A DNA stretch of 64,000 nt from the NCBI GenBank assembly GCA_964106645.2, contig OZ067044.1. One strand, given 5' to 3'. A model generated the notes under the pieces. That model was not told where the DNA came from, did not search any database, and worked only from the letters and a program-made list of their open reading frames with translations. This DNA is from Podarcis pityusensis (taxonomy: Eukaryota). Of the stretch, positions 18,476 through 47,041 are shown piece by piece; position 1 is the first letter of the stretch, and every line of letters starts with the position of its first letter. The position numbers were made by a program, and so were the translations under genes.

Positions 18476-19700
18476 GGGATTTCATTCCTGCCATTGCAGG
18501 ATGTGTGATTGTTTTCATCTCATGTCTGTGTTGACATTCCATACTGTTGGAGTCACGAGAAGGGAAGTTCAGTTACACTTTTCCGTTATGTTGCACTTTT
18601 GCTTTTCTGCTCTCTCAGAGATGAAGGAGAGGGGAGCTATGATTTCTTTTGTTCTGTTTTGTACATAATAACGTAGCTTAGAAATCCACACCTCCAATGC
18701 CTAGCTTCTGCTTGGACTCTGCTTATGTATTGCATGCATATATCTTCGGATATATGTCGCAGAAGCGCATTGGGAAAGAAGAGTGATGAATCATCCCGAG
18801 GGTCACTTGTGGAGGAGAACGCAGCTGCCTGGCATTTTCCAAGTTGGTGCAGAAGCCCAGCGAGGTCCAGCTCCATGTACCCAGGCACCAACAAGGACTA
18901 GATAACTCTCAGGGTCCCTTCCAACGCTTGTGCTTTATGAAATAATAGAGTTTTTTTCCAATGGTGCATGGAATTTAACTGAAAGATTTGACTGGGGGGA
19001 GGGAATGCAATTTTTTTTTTGCACACTTAATGATGGTTTTATTTTAGGGATGGGGAACCTTTTTGGGTTTGTGGGCCAAGTCCTAATCAGGATCAGCCTC
19101 ATGGGCCAAATTTGACAGGTGAAGCTGCTGGCAACCACACGGTTGTTAGGTGAGCAGAGCTTCACACCTGTTAAAATCCCTCCCACAGCTTTGCAAGTGG
19201 TCCTTGCTTCCTTCTTGTTTCTCGGTTCCTACTTGTTCATTCACTCCCAGACTTCCCTTTACAGAGGTGAATCTTAGGATAATCAGCGAGAGCTGGAATT
19301 CAAGATTCTGCCAGGGGTTTTGGCCCCATCTTGCTTTCTACTGGAGAAAGCTTTAAAACCTGTTTCCTAACGTTTCAACAGAAGCTTGTCAGCTGTATTG
19401 GAGGTGCCGAATCCTCTTTTAAAAAACAAAATCCCACTTTTGCTTACATAAATATTTTGAGTGAGATCCTTTCTGCATAACTTAAACGTTAGTCTTTGAG
19501 CGCTTAACTGCTGTGCTTTCTCAACATATGGCAGCTGTGTTATCAAGGGTGATGGATTGCAGTGCTGTCATAATTGGTACCATGAAATGGTTCAAAGGAG
19601 ATACGGAAATGTGGTGGTGTTTTGTTACGTTTTTAAAAATTAACTTTTCTTTTTCTTTTCAAAGGTGGCTTCCTTGCTCCAGATGCACAGTAAGTAGTCT

Positions 19701-19765
19701 GTAGCTGTAAACATCCCCGACTGGAAGCTGTAAGCTTTAGCTTTCAGTCAGATGTTTGCTGCCAC
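19701..19765 (+). ncRNA. MIR30D: pre-miR-30d hairpin (5p 19706-19727, 3p 19741-19762)
   Basis: TGTAAACATCCCCGACTGGAAG and CTTTCAGTCAGATGTTTGCTGC match the vertebrate miR-30d arms and pair as a hairpin; CNNC (CAAC 19780-19783) downstream; upstream of ZFAT on the same strand as in other vertebrates. Confidence 0.97.
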
Positions 19766-20056
19766 CGGCTATTCATAAACAACGGTGGAAGAAAAAGATC
19801 CATTATAACGATACATTATTTTAAGCTGACAGGCATGGAGGGGTTGTCTTAACACTTTTTAAATAGATGCCAGGGATTTGAACATGGGGTCTTCTGTATT
19901 CAAAGCATGCGTTCTTGCCCATTTCCCCCCTCCCTCATTTTTCCTAAACCTTCTTTGCATTCTCTGCCTTACAACCTGCCCTTTTGCACAAACACACGTA
20001 TACAAAGGGGTGCAGTATACATATTATTTAGTAATATTTTATCTATCCATTTTAAT

Positions 20057-23919: not shown

Positions 23920-24125
23920 TACAGACATGTTCAAAAGCAATGTGTCCTAGTTGAGATTTTAACTCCCTTAAAACGAAAGTTATGGCTTCAGCAAGGGGGA
24001 TTTAAGGCTGGAAAATAATGTTGATTCTCTCCATTGCATTCTGTGTACCTGGTATCTTGAAATATTGAAGTATGGACTCCTTTGAAGTGCATCAGTGTTG
24101 TGTTCACATTGTTATCCCTGATTCT

Positions 24126-24198
24126 TAGTTCATGTAAACATCCTACACTCAGCTCTAACAGACGGAACGGCTGAGAGGTGGGTGTTTACTTCAACTGA
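24126..24198 (+). ncRNA. MIR30B: pre-miR-30b hairpin (5p 24133-24154, 3p 24171-24192)
   Basis: TGTAAACATCCTACACTCAGCT is mature miR-30b-5p; complementary arm CTGAGAGGTGGGTGTTTACTTC; CNNC (CTGC 24209-24212); clustered 4.4 kb from miR-30d. Confidence 0.97.
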
Positions 24199-41500: not shown

Positions 41501-42329
41501 GTATCATGCTTTAATTTTAAGGATGCCTGATTGCATGCGAGTGCAGCATGTCAAGTATGGAAAGTAAAACCGATATATTTTGTTGTTTGAGGTAGAACAG
41601 AAAGTGGTTGAGTCCACCACTGCAGTATCCCAAGGCCAGCAGAGCTATTTTGCTACCCAAGCAGATGATCCTACGATCATATCACCCTGGGAGTAAAAAT
41701 ACAATAATAATGAAGGGTGACATCCAATATTGTGTGATCTGGTTTGTTTTTGTGCAGCAGCCCCTCCCTCTTTCCTGGCTGCAGTCATGCTCCTAAAATC
41801 TATTTTAGGGTGTTGGGAGGGGTCCTTCTGGAGCAGATTTTGGGTACGTATGTAGCTACAGGGAGAAGGAAAGCAGACATCTGTAGTGCAAGCGGGCAGT
41901 CATAATCAGGTAGCAACCTAATCAATTAACTAACAATCTGCTTGTTTTTCTTGTTGCCCAAATTCAGCCACTTGAGACACGTGCCTTACACTGCCAAACA
42001 GTAAGGCCGGTCCGGAAAGCATATTTTCCCCCTTGCCATCATAGAGAGATAAGAGCCAAAAGAGCGTAGATTACGCTCATGATCCAATAGCATGAGATGA
42101 CCAACTTTTATGTGTTCCGTGGGCATAGCATTATATGAATAGTGCGTGGTGTAGTGAAATACAGTACTGGGATGTTCATCACCATTTCAACTGCTCTGAG
42201 AGGTGCTGCTTACCTACAGGAAGAGTACAAAGCACACTCCTGCAAGGCACACCATGTGCACCATGTGCCATTAATCTAGATACCTTTTTTATTCCTTTCT
42301 ATTGGCAGTAGGACCCTGCATGCCTCCGA

Positions 42330-42884
42330 TGTCAGCATCGCCCTAGAGCCAGTGCACCAACTGGACTCTTGCACCTCAACCCCGACTGGGCTAGGCGAGC
42401 TGGGTAGCACCGCCAGAGACCTCCTTCTCACAGGAAACGGTCACAGTGCTGTGGACTCACAGCTCAGAGCTGAGAGCACCGGATTCACTGTCTCAATAAT
42501 ACAGTCGTTGCGCAGCAGAGTTTTGCAGAGTCTTGCAGAGTATAAACCACTCGGAGAGCAGCTCTGTAAAATATCTTCCTTTTATTCTATAACTACAACT
42601 ATGATACAAAGCTATATACAGAGCTGAATATTCTAAGCATAAATCAATGCTACACTGAGAGTCTGAAGCTGCTCTTAGCAGCAATCTTATCTCTAGGATC
42701 TCTAACACTCTCACTCTCTCCGATACACTGACTGACTGACTCTCTCTCTCACACACACACAGATATGTTGCTGGGCAGAATAAGTAGATAGGCAGGACAC
42801 GCCTCCTTCTCTCTGGAGAGTCAGCAGAGACCATCAGGAGATGATCAGGAGATTCTTGTGTATGGGAGGGGTGAAATCTCCTCA
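42330..42884 (-). repeat. 3' LTR of copia element (555 bp)
   Basis: Preceded on the - strand by PPT GAAATGGGGGAGGA (42885-42898); - strand TATATA (42613-42618) and AATAAA (42581-42586). Confidence 0.95.
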
Positions 42885-43161
42885 TCCTCCCCCATTTCAT
42901 CCGACCATTTCAAGAATCTTTAACATAACTGCAATTTGCACATACACTCCAAAAGTTGTTCTCTGCTTACAACCTTGGTTAACATATCTGCAGGTATCTC
43001 TCTCCCGGCATATAAAACACTTTTACAATACCATTGAATAAGCAGCTTCTGGAAAAATCTTCACACACATTTCTTCCTTTCAAATACAAATTGACATTTC
43101 TAATTAGGCAGATTTGAACAAACCATTTTTCAGAACTCAAATACACGCTTTCCTTCAAATA

Positions 43162-45699
43162 TCAGGTAAGGAAATAAATAAAGCGTTTTGTGCTACTACT
43201 CTCAGCACACTTCATGCTAGGTTTGAAAACCCCACCAGAGTTGCTCGTGACCGCAGCCTTTGCAAACTCTTCAGAAAACCTTTTCGGTGGTACACCCTTG
43301 GTTGTTCTCTCGGACCTGCGCAGAACTCTTTGATCCTCTTGTTCTGGTGCTTCCTCCTCTTTGGGAGAATGGGGAGCTAAAGTATATGAAGCTGCTAAGT
43401 CTGAGTCAGCGTCAGACTCACCTGAGGCTTTTGGGCTCTGATAATCTGTGCCATCATCTGGAACTACATTGGCATCAGGATTATCACCACCAACAACACT
43501 TGCCTCCCTCTTAACTTTCTTTGCCCCTTTTGCACCATCATCACAAATGGGATGATACTGAAAAACGCCAACTCTGTCCCATTGTGGATTGTCATCAATA
43601 CTCCTGGTCAGCCTTATGGTTTTCGTGTCTGTGATCAGAACACGATAAGACCCTTTCTCATATCCTAGGAAAATACCATGTTCTCCACGCTTGCTCAGTT
43701 TGTCACCCTGTGAGGTGTGCACCCAAACCTCCGAACCAAAAATTTTAAAATGCTTTACACATGGCTTTCTTCCGTGAAGCATCTCATATGGGGTGCAATT
43801 TACACTAGACTGGTATCTCCTGTTATACACATGACAGAAAAACGAAAGAGCTTCAGCCCAATAGGGATTGGGTAACCCCGAATCATGTAACAGCGTTCTG
43901 ATTCCTTGCTGCAGAGTCTGGTTTACTCTCTCACATAAACCATTCTGCCAGGGTGATCTGGGCGTGGCTGTCCTATGCTCAATGCCCTGTTCAGAAAGAA
44001 AACTCTCAAACTCTTCTGAACAAAACTCTCCACCCTTGTCTGTGAAAAGAAAACGTACATTCTCATTATGTACATTTCTGAGCCATTTACAAAACTGGCG
44101 AAACTTGGTAAAGGCTTCAGCCTTTTTCTGCAGCATATAGACCCAAACATATTTCGAATAGGAGTCTATCAGAACCATGAAAAACCTTGAATTGCCTCTA
44201 GAGAGCGCTAGAGGCCCCACTAAGTCTGCATGAATGACTTCATATGGTTTCTTGGCCTCTCTCCCAGACTCTGTACCTTTGGGAGCTTGCCTTGCCTTAC
44301 TCTCTGCACAAGAAACACATTTCATGTGGTAGGGACATTCTTTCAACTTCATACCCTGAACCATATCAGGCATTTTTGCCACAGCCTGGAAATTCAGATG
44401 ACCATAAACGCGATGGTAATAATGAATACATTGGTCATGCAACTTCTCATTCTTATCCACAGACAAATTGCAACACTCTTTCTCAGTTGCTTCTGCAGTG
44501 CCTGTACCTGAAACAAAAGGCAATTGGTACAAACCATTTACACATTTTGCATACAGAATGAGCTTGCCATCTCTAAGAATTTCACAGCGAGATTTAGCAA
44601 ACACCACCTTAAACCCTTGACGATCAAGCTGGGAAACACTCAACAAATTGTCCTGAATATCAGGCGCATACAGGACATTCTTAATAGTTGCATTCAGGCT
44701 CTTTAAGAACACAGTTCCCTGAGCCATACTCGTGAGAACTGTCCCATCTGCTTGATGAATTTCTTTCTCTTGCTTCTCAAGCTGAACAAAGAGATTCTTA
44801 TCTTTGGCCACGTGGTTTGAACAGCCAGAGTCGACCACGAAGAAACTCCGCCCACGTTGACTGGAACAGCGAGAGATCAAGGCCTTTGAAGTAGCAGGTG
44901 CATGGGGATTTCGTCCTCCTCCCCCTCTGCCTCTGAAGTTTCCCTTCTTCTTTGAAGACTTCTTACACTGGAAACTCAAATGGCCTTGTGCTCCACATGA
45001 AAAGCACCGCTTCAATTTCAAAGCTTTAACAGCAGCAGTTTCACTTTCACTTTCCCCTGCTGAAGACTCAGGCACATTTTCAAGCATATTTTTAACAGCA
45101 CAGTACCGGCTTTCTTTAACAGCCTGTCTGCGATCCCACTCATTCAAGAGCACGCTAGACACATAATCTTCTGTTAGCCGGTCAGAAGGCATTGTGGAAA
45201 TCTGGGCAGCCACTCCATCATAAGACTCATCTAGGCTATTGATCATCAGCATTGCAAACACAGCCTCTGAAATAGCCAGGTCTCGCTGAACAAGGTCCTG
45301 TCTGAGACGCTTTAATTGAGATAGATGGCTAGGCAAATCACCACCTTTCTCCAACTGCAGCCTGCACAGCTTCTTAAAGAAAATCACACTGGAACCAGCA
45401 TTTTGTCTAAGATGCATATCTCTCAACTTATGCCAAACAGCTTGTGCAGTCTCTTGACCCTCTAAGTTCACCAGCAAGTGGTCTGAAACACTCAAAATAA
45501 TTGTCCCTCGGGCTTTCATATCTGCAGCATGCCATTCAGCCCAATCATCATCATCCTTATCTGGAGGGTCATCTTCTATCGTGTGAAATAGCTTTTCCCT
45601 CTGTAAAAGCGCTTTCATCTTTACTTGCCAAACTGCATAGGTTTCAGGCGTGAGGAGAGGAAAGGACAGAGCCATCTGGCCAGAATGTGCACAGGCCAT
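43162..45699 (-). CDS. copia Gag-protease-integrase polyprotein, 845 aa, lacking RT/RNase H
   Basis: Gag N-terminus YAVWQVKMKALL, CCHC knuckle CFSCGAQGHLSFQC, protease VVDSGCSNH, HHCC (HRVYGH...CVSC), integrase IHADLVGP / TDKGGEF / QNGLCE with D(35)E spacing, GIFLGY, RRSERTTKG; stops before any RT motif. Confidence 0.93.
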   Translation of the reverse strand: MACAHSGQMALSFPLLTPETYAVWQVKMKALLQREKLFHTIEDDPPDKDDDDWAEWHAADMKARGTIILSVSDHLLVNLEGQETAQAVWHKLRDMHLRQNAGSSVIFFKKLCRLQLEKGGDLPSHLSQLKRLRQDLVQRDLAISEAVFAMLMINSLDESYDGVAAQISTMPSDRLTEDYVSSVLLNEWDRRQAVKESRYCAVKNMLENVPESSAGESESETAAVKALKLKRCFSCGAQGHLSFQCKKSSKKKGNFRGRGGGGRNPHAPATSKALISRCSSQRGRSFFVVDSGCSNHVAKDKNLFVQLEKQEKEIHQADGTVLTSMAQGTVFLKSLNATIKNVLYAPDIQDNLLSVSQLDRQGFKVVFAKSRCEILRDGKLILYAKCVNGLYQLPFVSGTGTAEATEKECCNLSVDKNEKLHDQCIHYYHRVYGHLNFQAVAKMPDMVQGMKLKECPYHMKCVSCAESKARQAPKGTESGREAKKPYEVIHADLVGPLALSRGNSRFFMVLIDSYSKYVWVYMLQKKAEAFTKFRQFCKWLRNVHNENVRFLFTDKGGEFCSEEFESFLSEQGIEHRTATPRSPWQNGLCERVNQTLQQGIRTLLHDSGLPNPYWAEALSFFCHVYNRRYQSSVNCTPYEMLHGRKPCVKHFKIFGSEVWVHTSQGDKLSKRGEHGIFLGYEKGSYRVLITDTKTIRLTRSIDDNPQWDRVGVFQYHPICDDGAKGAKKVKREASVVGGDNPDANVVPDDGTDYQSPKASGESDADSDLAASYTLAPHSPKEEEAPEQEDQRVLRRSERTTKGVPPKRFSEEFAKAAVTSNSGGVFKPSMKCAESSSTKRFIYFLT

Positions 45700-46051
45700 G
45701 TCTGCTATTACTTAGAGCAAGACACTTCCCTCGTGCAACACAGATAAAGCCTTGACTCCCTCAGCCACTCTCTCTCCCACTCAGAGCGCAATTAACAGGC
45801 AAACAGGGATGCTATCTTCTTTCTTTGGCAGTCAGCAACATACCTCCATAAATCAAGCAGCAGCAACAGCAACAGCGGCAGCTTGAACACTCTGCTCCAA
45901 AACAGCTCTGCTTCTGGGCACCGCAAATCAGTCCAGCATGCAGCGTCCGTTCCACCGTCCGGCAATCAGCAACAGAAACCTCTGGCGACTGGGACGCCTG
46001 GGACGCCTGGGATGACTGGAACAACGCCAGGTCAGACGACTGGAACAACGA

Positions 46052-46065
46052 CTGGGCCCATAACC
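46052..46065 (-). promoter_or_regulatory. Primer binding site complementary to the anticodon arm of initiator tRNA-Met (half-tRNA priming)
   Basis: + strand CTGGGCCCATAACC equals the internal anticodon-arm sequence of tRNAiMet; same PBS type as Drosophila copia. Confidence 0.9.
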
Positions 46066-46067
46066 GA

Positions 46068-46626
46068 TGTCAGCATCGCCCTAGAGCCAGTGCACCAACT
46101 GGACTCTTGCACCTCAACCCCGACTGGGCTAGGCGAGCTGGGTAGCACCGCCAGAGACCTCCTTCTCACAGGAAACGGTCACAGTGCTGTGGACTCACAG
46201 CTCAGAGCTGAGAGCACCGGATTCACTGTCTCAATAATACAGTCGTTGCGCAGCAGAGTTTTGCAGAGTCTTGCAGAGTATAAACCACTCGGAGAGCAGC
46301 TCTGTAAAATATCTTCCTTTTATTCTATAACTACAACTATGATACAAAGCTATATACAGAACTGAATATTCTAAGCATAAATCAATGCTACACTGAGAGT
46401 CTGCAGCTGCTCTTAGCAGCAATCTTATCTCTAGGATCTCTAACACTCTCACTCTCTCCGATACACTGACTGACTGACTCTCTCTCTCTCTCACACACAC
46501 ACAGATATGTTGCTGGGCAGAATAAGTAGATAGGCAGGACACGCCTCCTTCTCTCTGGAGAGTCAGCAGAGACCATCAGGAGATGATCAGGAGATTCTTG
46601 TGTATGGGAGGGGTGAAATCTCCTCA
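46068..46626 (-). repeat. 5' LTR of copia element (559 bp)
   Basis: Direct repeat of 42330-42884; followed on the - strand by TC + GGTTATGGGCCCAG primer site. Confidence 0.95.
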
Positions 46627-46870
46627 TCCAGTTCCCACTGTTATGGAACTATCAGTGCAAGCAGAGTGACAGTGAAAAACTCTGGGCTTGTTGTACTTTT
46701 GGGGGGGGGGGGGATAGCAACCACTATGTATTGCTTCTCAGCGATCAAACCAAATTAACAACAAAAAAGATCTTGACTTGAATAATTTCATGGGTTTCCT
46801 TTTTTCAGATTAACTGTTAAAATGGGAAAAGAAGTTAATAACCCACCTTAATTTATGTTATATTTTCCAG

Positions 46871-47041
46871 GAAACAGATCCATCTTTATGTGCAAGCTCT
46901 GTAACTTATTTTCCCCGAACCAGTCACAACTGCTGTCTCATGTCTCCGAGCAGCATTCCGAAGAAGGGATTAAGGTGGATGACATCGTTATTCCTCTCAG
47001 ACCTCTTACGACGCCAGCAAATCTAAATAAAAACGGAGAAG
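46871..47041 (+). CDS. ZFAT: ZFAT coding exon 2 (first C2H2 finger)
   Basis: ttttccag acceptor, gtacgg donor, 171 nt; IFMCKLCNLFSPNQSQLLSHVSEQH...IPLRPL matches ZFAT. Confidence 0.95.

What the first reader, a model, noticed from the sequence alone, without database searches (positions are those of the whole stretch)
42330..46626. Young RT-less copia element that keeps an intact Gag-protease-integrase: candidate semi-autonomous parasite family
Seen: by eye the LTRs differ by only two substitutions and a 4-bp (TC)n slip, so the insertion is recent. The 845-aa ORF is uninterrupted with all catalytic motifs (CCHC, DSG, HHCC, DD35E), yet only ~260 bp separate its stop from the PPT. There is no RT. 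That gap holds a frameshifted RNase H C-terminal relic (GIVKVFYMPG / EIPADMLTKVVSREQL..., 43032-42920; ADMLTK at 42974-42991). Inference: the relic looks more decayed than the LTRs have diverged, so RT loss probably preceded transposition. The family would build its own particles and integrase while borrowing RT/RNase H in trans. Known non-autonomous types are mostly non-coding (TRIM/LARD), gag-only or gag-defective, so a gag-PR-IN type in a vertebrate would be unusual.
Basis: partly seen in the sequence, partly recalled or inferred. Interest (0 to 1): 0.82.

Follow-up and report, generated by a model that had tools for sequence, protein, structure and literature searches.

The report
Abundant RT-less copia retrotransposon family
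This is one recent copy of a jumping-gene family in a lizard-like genome that has lost its reverse transcriptase yet has multiplied to roughly a couple of hundred copies, is transcribed, and keeps its capsid-protease-integrase gene under natural selection, so it probably makes its own particles and integrase while taking the copying enzyme from another element.

Summary
A minus-strand Ty1/copia element lies at 42328-46626. Its LTRs differ by 2 substitutions and a 4-bp slip. It has one 845-aa Gag-PR-IN ORF and no RT. About 44 residues of RNase H survive as a frameshifted tail.

The deletion is a family trait, not a local accident:
- Contigs from five other sequencing runs are collinear across the junction at about 99.2% identity.
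- In the best-holding DNA run, element contigs have about 180x the k-mer depth of the single-copy flanks.
- A related organism has an empty site here but hundreds of copies elsewhere.
- Its stranded RNA-seq reads cover the element on one strand only, the ORF's sense strand under the usual library convention.

The ORF is under purifying selection inside the RT-less lineage. Of 34 variable sites, 23 are synonymous, against 9 expected. Pairwise omega is 0.10-0.23, against 0.13 versus an RT-bearing relative.

The RT donor was not found, so trans-complementation remains inferred. The closest precedents are mouse IAP 1-delta-1 and the semi-autonomous LTR elements of wheat, so this is a new variant of a known kind.

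First readers of this scan noted similar RT-less copia copies elsewhere in this genome. Those notes are unchecked.

The parts
46066..46626 (-). 5' LTR (561 bp), starts TG, ends ...CATC
   Evidence: Direct repeat and alignment. The boundary is set by the PBS that abuts it and by the empty-site joint.
46052..46065 (-). Primer binding site, 14 nt, complementary to the anticodon stem-loop of initiator tRNA-Met (half-tRNA, Hemivirus type)
   Evidence: Sequence read. The tRNA sequence is from my memory. Two unrelated copia contigs (L008, L011) have the same PBS and differ at one base in the last 10 nt of U5.
45700..46051 (-). 5' untranslated leader
43162..45699 (-). 845-aa Gag-CCHC-protease-integrase-SH3 ORF, stop included. 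The last ~7 residues lie past the 5' deletion breakpoint (~43186).
   Evidence: All six compared copies keep 845 codons.
43054..43185 (-). 132 bp between the two breakpoints, with no detectable homology to RT or RNase H
   Evidence: tblastn and blastn against RT-bearing relatives.
42920..43053 (-). Relic of the last ~44 residues of RNase H, with a 1-nt frameshift near 43000-43006 and the ancestral pol stop
   Evidence: tblastn of P0002 residues 1295-1338. Frames shown.
42885..42897 (-). Polypurine tract ending GGGGGAGGA, directly before the 3' LTR
   Evidence: The RT-bearing relatives L006 and L007 have the same arrangement.
42328..42884 (-). 3' LTR (557 bp)
   Evidence: A read from another copy leaves the LTR into a different flank exactly at 42328.
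46627..46629 (-). Target-site duplication GGA, left copy
   Evidence: Empty-site contig of run X8, joint 42312->46627.
42325..42327 (-). Target-site duplication GGA, right copy
   Evidence: Same joint.

Best explanation
This is one young copy, of order 1 million years old, of a large and recently active lineage of Ty1/copia (Hemivirus-like) LTR retrotransposons. An internal deletion of about 1.2-1.4 kb removed RT and most of RNase H.

Shown:
- The deleted structure is shared by many copies and by several related organisms.
- The family is transcribed on one strand, the sense strand under the usual library convention.
- The insertion is absent at the orthologous site of a related organism.
- The Gag-PR-IN ORF evolves under purifying selection as strong as before RT loss.

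Inferred mechanism:
- The element's RNA is translated into Gag-PR-IN.
- These proteins act preferentially on the RNA that encoded them. Gag packages it, and the integrase recognises the family's own unusual TG...TC LTR ends.
- RT and RNase H enter the particle from an RT-bearing copia element, probably by co-assembly of that element's Gag-Pol.
- cDNA synthesis is primed by a half initiator tRNA-Met, and the family's own integrase inserts the cDNA.

The cis advantage of a working ORF would explain why non-synonymous changes are purged even though the element cannot replicate alone.
For: Anatomy:
- LTRs, PBS, PPT, ORF domains and relic are as described.

Family trait:
- L001-L005, from five runs, are collinear across the junction at 99.1-99.3% identity. 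They encode four distinct 845-aa variants.
- In run X1, single element contigs have depth 3066-3520 against 16.5-18.1 for the flank contigs that carry this insertion. The post-ORF bin (7314) is as deep as the ORF bins.
- Run X8 has an empty site here (depth 34) but element bins in the tens of thousands.

Transcription:
- X23 stranded RNA reads give depth 11-36 on one strand, at most 1.9 on the other and zero in the flanks.
- An X15 RNA contig bridges 43293-42964.

Selection:
- 23 synonymous against 11 non-synonymous changes. The spectrum-matched expectation is 9.0 +/- 2.5 synonymous, and 0 of 20,000 simulations reached 23.
- Omega is 0.12-0.14 for the window copy against each contig, and 0.129 against RT-bearing L006.
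- No indel or stop occurs in any of the six copies.
- Of the 18 listed differences to organism E's RNA, 11 are synonymous and 7 are not.
- The relic in organism E is far more diverged and carries a stop.

Precedent for a cis-acting protein in a trans-dependent deleted element: IAP 1-delta-1 (PMC6466679).
Against: - No RT-bearing partner was identified. The nearest full-length relative is only 67% identical in Gag-PR-IN, and it uses the 3' end of tRNAiMet rather than the half-tRNA site.
- Only two RT fragments above 40% identity to that relative's RT exist in the protein collection.
- Variants are clustered, and synonymous divergence (2.4-3.4%) exceeds non-coding divergence (~0.5%). This points to recombination among lineages, so part of the synonymous excess could have been imported from RT-bearing relatives.
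- Logan contigs are majority paths through many copies, not single loci.
- Copy number comes from k-mer depth, not from counted loci.
- The assignment of the transcripts to the sense strand rests on the usual library convention plus a single host-exon read.
Confidence: 0.6

Rival explanations
1. Ordinary passive non-autonomous element. The RNA is simply packaged and copied by a helper's proteins. The ORF is open only because the burst is recent, and the synonymous bias was imported by template switching with autonomous relatives that are themselves under selection.
For: - Variants come in tight clusters (45409/45406/45403, 44488-44458, 43879-43862).
- dS is 4-6 times the non-coding divergence.
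- The depth profile suggests modular sharing of segments among subfamilies.
Against: - No RT-bearing relative closer than 67% was found to donate such tracts.
- Variant alleles do not track L006.
- All six sequences share the deletion, so under a single origin their differences arose after it.
- Omega equals the long-term value, with no sign of relaxation.
- The neighbouring relic has decayed while the ORF has not.
Confidence: 0.27
2. The family took RT from a helper that is now extinct or silent. The copies are fossils of a finished burst, and present-day transcription has no consequence.
For: - No helper was seen.
- This copy has already gained two LTR substitutions and about five private non-synonymous changes.
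Against: - The insertion is absent in a related organism.
- The U3 half of the LTR has about 2x the internal depth, so there are few solo LTRs and the family is young.
- Another first-reader note reports identical LTRs in a sister copy. That note is unchecked.
Confidence: 0.1
3. One-off deletion at this locus, or an assembly collapse.
For: None found.
Against: - The same junction is present in contigs of five other runs and in RNA of another organism.
- The junction region has about the same depth as the ORF, hundreds of times the flank depth.
- The junction contigs of X1 match the window exactly.
Confidence: 0.01

Closest known systems
Mouse IAP 1-delta-1 (I-delta-1) endogenous retrovirus subtype
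   Same: - It is a vertebrate LTR element with a shared internal deletion that still has an ORF.
- It cannot replicate alone and needs proteins in trans.
- It is nevertheless the most active form.
- Its own protein helps in cis (PMC6466679).
   Different: - IAP is a betaretrovirus-like class II ERV. Its deletion fuses gag to pol, and it keeps RT.
- Here the element is Ty1/copia, the deletion removes RT and RNase H cleanly, and Gag, PR and IN stay whole.
Semi-autonomous and non-autonomous LTR retrotransposons of wheat and barley (RLG_Sabrina/WHAM with RLG_Wilma; BARE2 with BARE1)
   Same: They are long-lived lineages that lack part of the coding set and depend on a partner. Partners are recognised by shared PBS, LTR termini and timing of activity (PMC9744471).
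   Different: - These are plant elements. Sabrina and WHAM lack both RT and IN, and BARE2 lacks functional Gag.
- A lineage that keeps Gag, PR and IN and lacks only RT/RNase H is not among those described there.
Drosophila copia / genus Hemivirus (Pseudoviridae)
   Same: - Single gag-pol ORF with the order Gag-PR-IN-(RT-RH).
- PBS complementary to an internal part of initiator tRNA-Met rather than its 3' end (ICTV profile PMC8515867; copia's PBS is from my memory).
   Different: - copia is autonomous and makes 5-bp duplications with TG...CA ends.
- This element lacks RT, ends in TG...TC and shows a 3-bp duplication at this locus.
TRIM, LARD and TR-GAG non-autonomous LTR elements
   Same: They are LTR-bounded, have a PBS and PPT, and are mobilised in trans.
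   Different: They have no ORF, or only gag. This element encodes three of the five enzymatic or structural functions.

Membership tests
Ty1/copia (Pseudoviridae) LTR retrotransposon | Copia-type Gag and domain order PR-IN upstream of RT-RNase H | tested here: met
   PF14223, Pol_BBD, rve and SH3_retrovirus hit in that order. The RNase H tail relic lies downstream of IN.
Ty1/copia (Pseudoviridae) LTR retrotransposon | RVT_2 reverse transcriptase and RNase H | tested here: not met
   No RVT_2 hit. About 452 residues are missing relative to P0002. It is therefore a deletion derivative, not a complete member.
Ty1/copia (Pseudoviridae) LTR retrotransposon | LTRs with PBS for initiator tRNA-Met and a PPT | tested here: met
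   The tRNA sequence itself comes from memory.
Ty1/copia (Pseudoviridae) LTR retrotransposon | 5-bp target-site duplication and TG...CA termini | tested here: not met
   The empty site in X8 leaves a 3-bp GGA duplication, and the LTR ends in ...CATC. This rests on one locus only.
Genus Hemivirus | Primer is only a short internal segment of the tRNA | tested here: inconclusive
   The 14-nt PBS matches the anticodon stem-loop of vertebrate tRNAiMet as I remember it. No tRNA sequence was available from a tool. Unrelated copia contigs L008 and L011 carry the same PBS, with a near-identical U5 end.
Partly coding, trans-dependent deleted LTR element (IAP 1-delta-1 type) | One internal deletion shared by many independently inserted copies | tested here: met
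   Depth is about 180x single copy. Loose ends lead into other flanks. The orthologous site is empty in organism E.
Partly coding, trans-dependent deleted LTR element (IAP 1-delta-1 type) | Retained ORF that matters for the element's own spread | tested here: met
   Omega is 0.10-0.23 among RT-less copies, with 23 synonymous of 34 changes against 9 expected. This is indirect evidence, and recombination is a caveat.
Partly coding, trans-dependent deleted LTR element (IAP 1-delta-1 type) | Missing function supplied by a full-length partner | not testable with these tools
   The source genome cannot be searched here. No partner turned up in the protein collection.
TRIM / LARD / TR-GAG | No coding capacity, or gag only | tested here: not met
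   An 845-aa Gag-PR-IN ORF is present.

The most novel reading that the evidence does not exclude
A stable two-component retrotransposon in an amniote. A Gag-PR-IN half-element lineage would be kept by its own purifying selection and would outnumber any RT-bearing element of its own lineage. It would obtain RT and RNase H from a different copia lineage, one with other LTR ends or another way of using the tRNA primer. The unit of replication would then be split between two co-evolving genomes.
Probability: 0.2. Interest if true: 0.85.

Novelty: new variant of a known kind. Interest (0 to 1): 0.62.

Why it matters
Non-autonomous LTR elements are usually seen as passive RNAs that ride on a helper. 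Here a lineage has discarded only the polymerase. It still reached high copy number, and its capsid, protease and integrase remain under selection as strong as in autonomous relatives.

That pattern implies a strong cis preference of Gag and/or integrase for their own RNA or cDNA. It also gives a natural system for asking how RT gets into a particle built mainly from RT-less polyproteins. Ty1/copia elements are scarce in amniotes, so an active, abundant family shared by several species is useful for squamate genome evolution as well. This copy sits about 240 bp from a coding exon of a zinc-finger gene.

Tried and rejected
- A word search with the last 245 residues of the ORF, meant to recover diverged fragments that carry the junction, returned nothing.
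- The RT-region search found no close RT in the runs that hold the 845-aa form. This is absence of evidence only, because Logan contigs are short.
- A metagenome scan with the U5-PBS motif gave four loci. Two look like chance matches. Two (L008, L011) are a distant copia family, with RT 31% identical to P0002. They are not helpers, but they support the U5/PBS boundary.
- I tested whether clustered variants were copied from the L006 family. They were not.
- ARAGORN and Rfam found no RNA gene inside the element.
- A PDB search with the host exon gave only generic C2H2 fingers. Naming it ZFAT rests on my memory and on the two mir-30 genes nearby.
- The loose end at 43220 in X23 is a sequencing adapter, not an RT junction.
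- A 5-bp duplication with TG...CA ends was considered. It would need two adjacent mismatches, and another copy also ends in TC, so I rejected it.
- Searches used an in-memory majority-letter reference of the ORF, only to count changes. It was neither printed nor saved. The pairwise figures need no such reference and give the same answer.
Full report
ANATOMY

The element lies on the minus strand. Two direct repeats, 42328-42884 and 46066-46626, differ by two substitutions and a 4-bp (GA)n slip. Between them is a single ORF, 45699..43162, of 845 aa. It hits copia-type Gag, a CCHC knuckle, the Pol beta-barrel protease domain, the integrase core and the post-integrase SH3 domain. It has no RVT_2 hit.

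The 5' LTR is followed at once by a 14-nt site. As I remember the vertebrate initiator tRNA-Met, this site is complementary to its anticodon stem-loop. That is the half-tRNA priming that defines hemiviruses (PMC8515867). A purine tract ending GGGGGAGGA precedes the 3' LTR. The same tract precedes the LTR of two RT-bearing relatives.

THE DELETION

The closest full-length relative in the protein collection is P0002 (1338 aa, contig L006). It aligns with the window ORF at 67% identity up to about residue 838. Its last 44 residues, including the stop, align with 43053-42920 in two frames one base apart. About 452 residues, meaning all of RT and most of RNase H, are therefore missing. The 132 bp between the two breakpoints has no detectable homology.

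IS IT A FAMILY?

Evidence from other runs:
- The protein search returned a cluster of four distinct 845-aa variants from five Logan runs.
- Their contigs L001-L005 are collinear with the window element at 99.1-99.3%. L001, L002, L004 and L005 run on across the ORF stop and into or through the relic; L003 stops about 80 bp past the stop.

Evidence from the best-holding DNA run (X1):
- The two contigs that join this insertion to its flanks match the window exactly. Their k-mer depths are 18.1 and 16.5.
- Single internal contigs have depth 3066-3520.
- The bin covering the post-ORF relic region (7314) is as deep as the ORF bins.
- This puts the family at roughly 180-200 copy-equivalents. It is a depth estimate, not a count of loci.
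- The U3 half of the LTR is about twice the internal depth, so solo LTRs are few.

Evidence from a related organism (E):
- A contig joins 42312 to 46627. The site is empty there, while element bins reach tens of thousands.
- Reads leave the LTR ends into other flanks, which shows other insertion sites.

Distribution: at least seven organism labels in six or more studies hold half or more of the sampled words.

Neither is met.

TRANSCRIPTION

Raw stranded RNA-seq of organism E (X23) gives depth 11-36 with the first mate on the plus strand. It gives at most 1.9 on the other strand and zero in both flanks. This asymmetry excludes DNA contamination, which matters for a family with hundreds of copies. 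By the usual library convention the RNA is on the minus strand, sense to the ORF. The one read on the plus-strand host exon has the opposite orientation, as expected.

A second run (X15) is RNA, because it holds the host exon 46868-47041 with spliced ends and no intron. It contains a contig that bridges the ORF stop and the relic (43293-42964).

In organism E the relic is much more diverged than the ORF and carries a stop codon. The expressed copies there are therefore also without a working RNase H.

SELECTION

Among the window copy and L001-L005, all six keep 845 codons without any indel. Of 34 variable ORF sites, 23 are synonymous and 11 are not. When the same mutation types are placed at random, 9.0 +/- 2.5 are synonymous, and none of 20,000 trials reached 23.

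Pairwise Nei-Gojobori omega:

| Comparison | Omega |
|---|---|
| Most pairs of RT-less copies | 0.10-0.23 |
| Window copy against each contig | 0.12-0.14 |
| Window copy against RT-bearing L006 | 0.129 |

Constraint has therefore not relaxed since RT was lost. Of the 18 best-supported differences between the window and organism E's transcripts, 11 are synonymous. Three of the seven non-synonymous ones lie in the short tail at or beyond the breakpoint.

All compared copies share the deletion, so these changes most simply arose after it. This means that RT-less elements with a working Gag-PR-IN leave more descendants. That requires some cis preference of the proteins for their own RNA or cDNA, as was shown experimentally for mouse IAP 1-delta-1 (PMC6466679).

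CAVEATS AND UNEXPLAINED POINTS

- Synonymous divergence (2.4-3.4%) is several times the non-coding divergence (about 0.5%; Fisher p between 2e-5 and 1e-3).
- Variants cluster within 10-30 bp. Both points suggest exchange of tracts between lineages, so part of the signal could come from relatives whose RT status is unknown. The tracts do not come from the L006 family.
- Purine transitions outnumber pyrimidine transitions 20 to 5 on the sense strand (p = 0.009). This strand asymmetry fits mutation during the RNA/cDNA cycle.
- Logan contigs are majority paths through many copies rather than single loci.

THE HELPER

No helper was identified.
- No full-length protein closer than 67% appeared.
- Only two RT fragments above 40% identity to P0002's RT exist in the collection: one in an anguid lizard and one Logan contig, L007.
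- L006 uses the 3' end of tRNAiMet, not the half-tRNA site, and has different LTR termini. It is an unlikely partner.
- In X1 the R-U5 half of the LTR is 4-5 times the internal depth, while the U3 half is about twice. Other elements therefore share R-U5, and a helper may be among them.
- First readers of this scan noted, on other pieces of this genome, one intact young copia and several RT-less copia copies. One of those is 4278 letters long with Gag-PR-IN. These notes are unchecked leads and I could not see their sequences.

AGE AND CONTEXT

Two substitutions in 562 aligned LTR positions give about 0.6-2.5 million years for neutral rates of 3e-9 to 0.7e-9 per site per year. The rates are assumed. 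The element is antisense to a spliced C2H2 zinc-finger exon and about 240 bp upstream of it. The window also holds two mir-30 genes. From memory this is the ZFAT / miR-30b-30d locus, which was not tested.

VERDICT

The element is a member of an abundant, transcribed, multi-species, RT-less Gag-PR-IN copia lineage under purifying selection. Trans-supply of RT is the only reasonable way for it to have multiplied, but the donor is unknown. It is a new variant of a known kind, namely partly coding, trans-dependent LTR elements. It is not a new category.

Noticed in passing
window 42325-42330 and 46625-46629: Against the empty site in organism E, only 3 bp (GGA) are duplicated and the integrated LTR ends TG...TC. 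The canonical copia pattern is a 5-bp duplication with TG...CA. A second copy in organism E also leaves the LTR right after ...CATC.
   Followed up: partly
L006:640-660 versus window 46052-46065: The 67%-identical RT-bearing relative primes from the 3' end of tRNAiMet (TGGTAGCAGAGG, after a 2-nt spacer). The window family uses the anticodon-loop half. Two related copia lineages therefore use different parts of the same tRNA.
   Followed up: partly
window 43162-45699 versus the non-coding parts of the element: Synonymous divergence among RT-less copies is 4-6 times the divergence of leader, relic region and LTR. Variants sit in tight clusters (45409/45406/45403, 44488-44458, 43879-43862). This suggests mosaic ancestry through template switching.
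   Followed up: partly
window 43162-45699: A<->G differences outnumber C<->T differences 20 to 5 on the sense strand (p about 0.009). This strand bias would fit mutation or editing at the RNA or cDNA stage.
   Followed up: no
window 42942-43025: Run X1 holds a subfamily (depth ~308, about 17 copy-equivalents) in which 82 bp of the RNase H relic are replaced by 14 other letters. RNA reads of organism E show a similar variant at 43035.
   Followed up: no
window 42328-42884 (LTR): In X1 the R-U5 half of the LTR (about 42328-42620) has 4-5 times the internal depth, while the U3 half has about twice. The integrase region is 2-3 times deeper than the Gag-protease region. Related subfamilies seem to share modules.
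   Followed up: no
window 46868-47041 (+): A C2H2 zinc-finger coding exon is spliced in RNA run X15. It lies about 240 bp from the antisense element. From memory it is the N-terminal exon of ZFAT.
   Followed up: partly
window 19698-19768 and 24125-24198 (+): Two mir-30 precursors reach the Rfam gathering score (65.4 and 59.9 bits).
   Followed up: no
window 42312/42313: Organism E has 14 extra letters in the flank, 12 bp from the insertion site, relative to the window.
   Followed up: no
L008:460-900 and L011:780-1200: Two JGI metagenome contigs carry a distant copia family (RT 31% identical to P0002). Its PBS is the same half-tRNA site, and the last 10 nt of its U5 (...CTAACATC) differ from the window's at one base.
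   Followed up: partly
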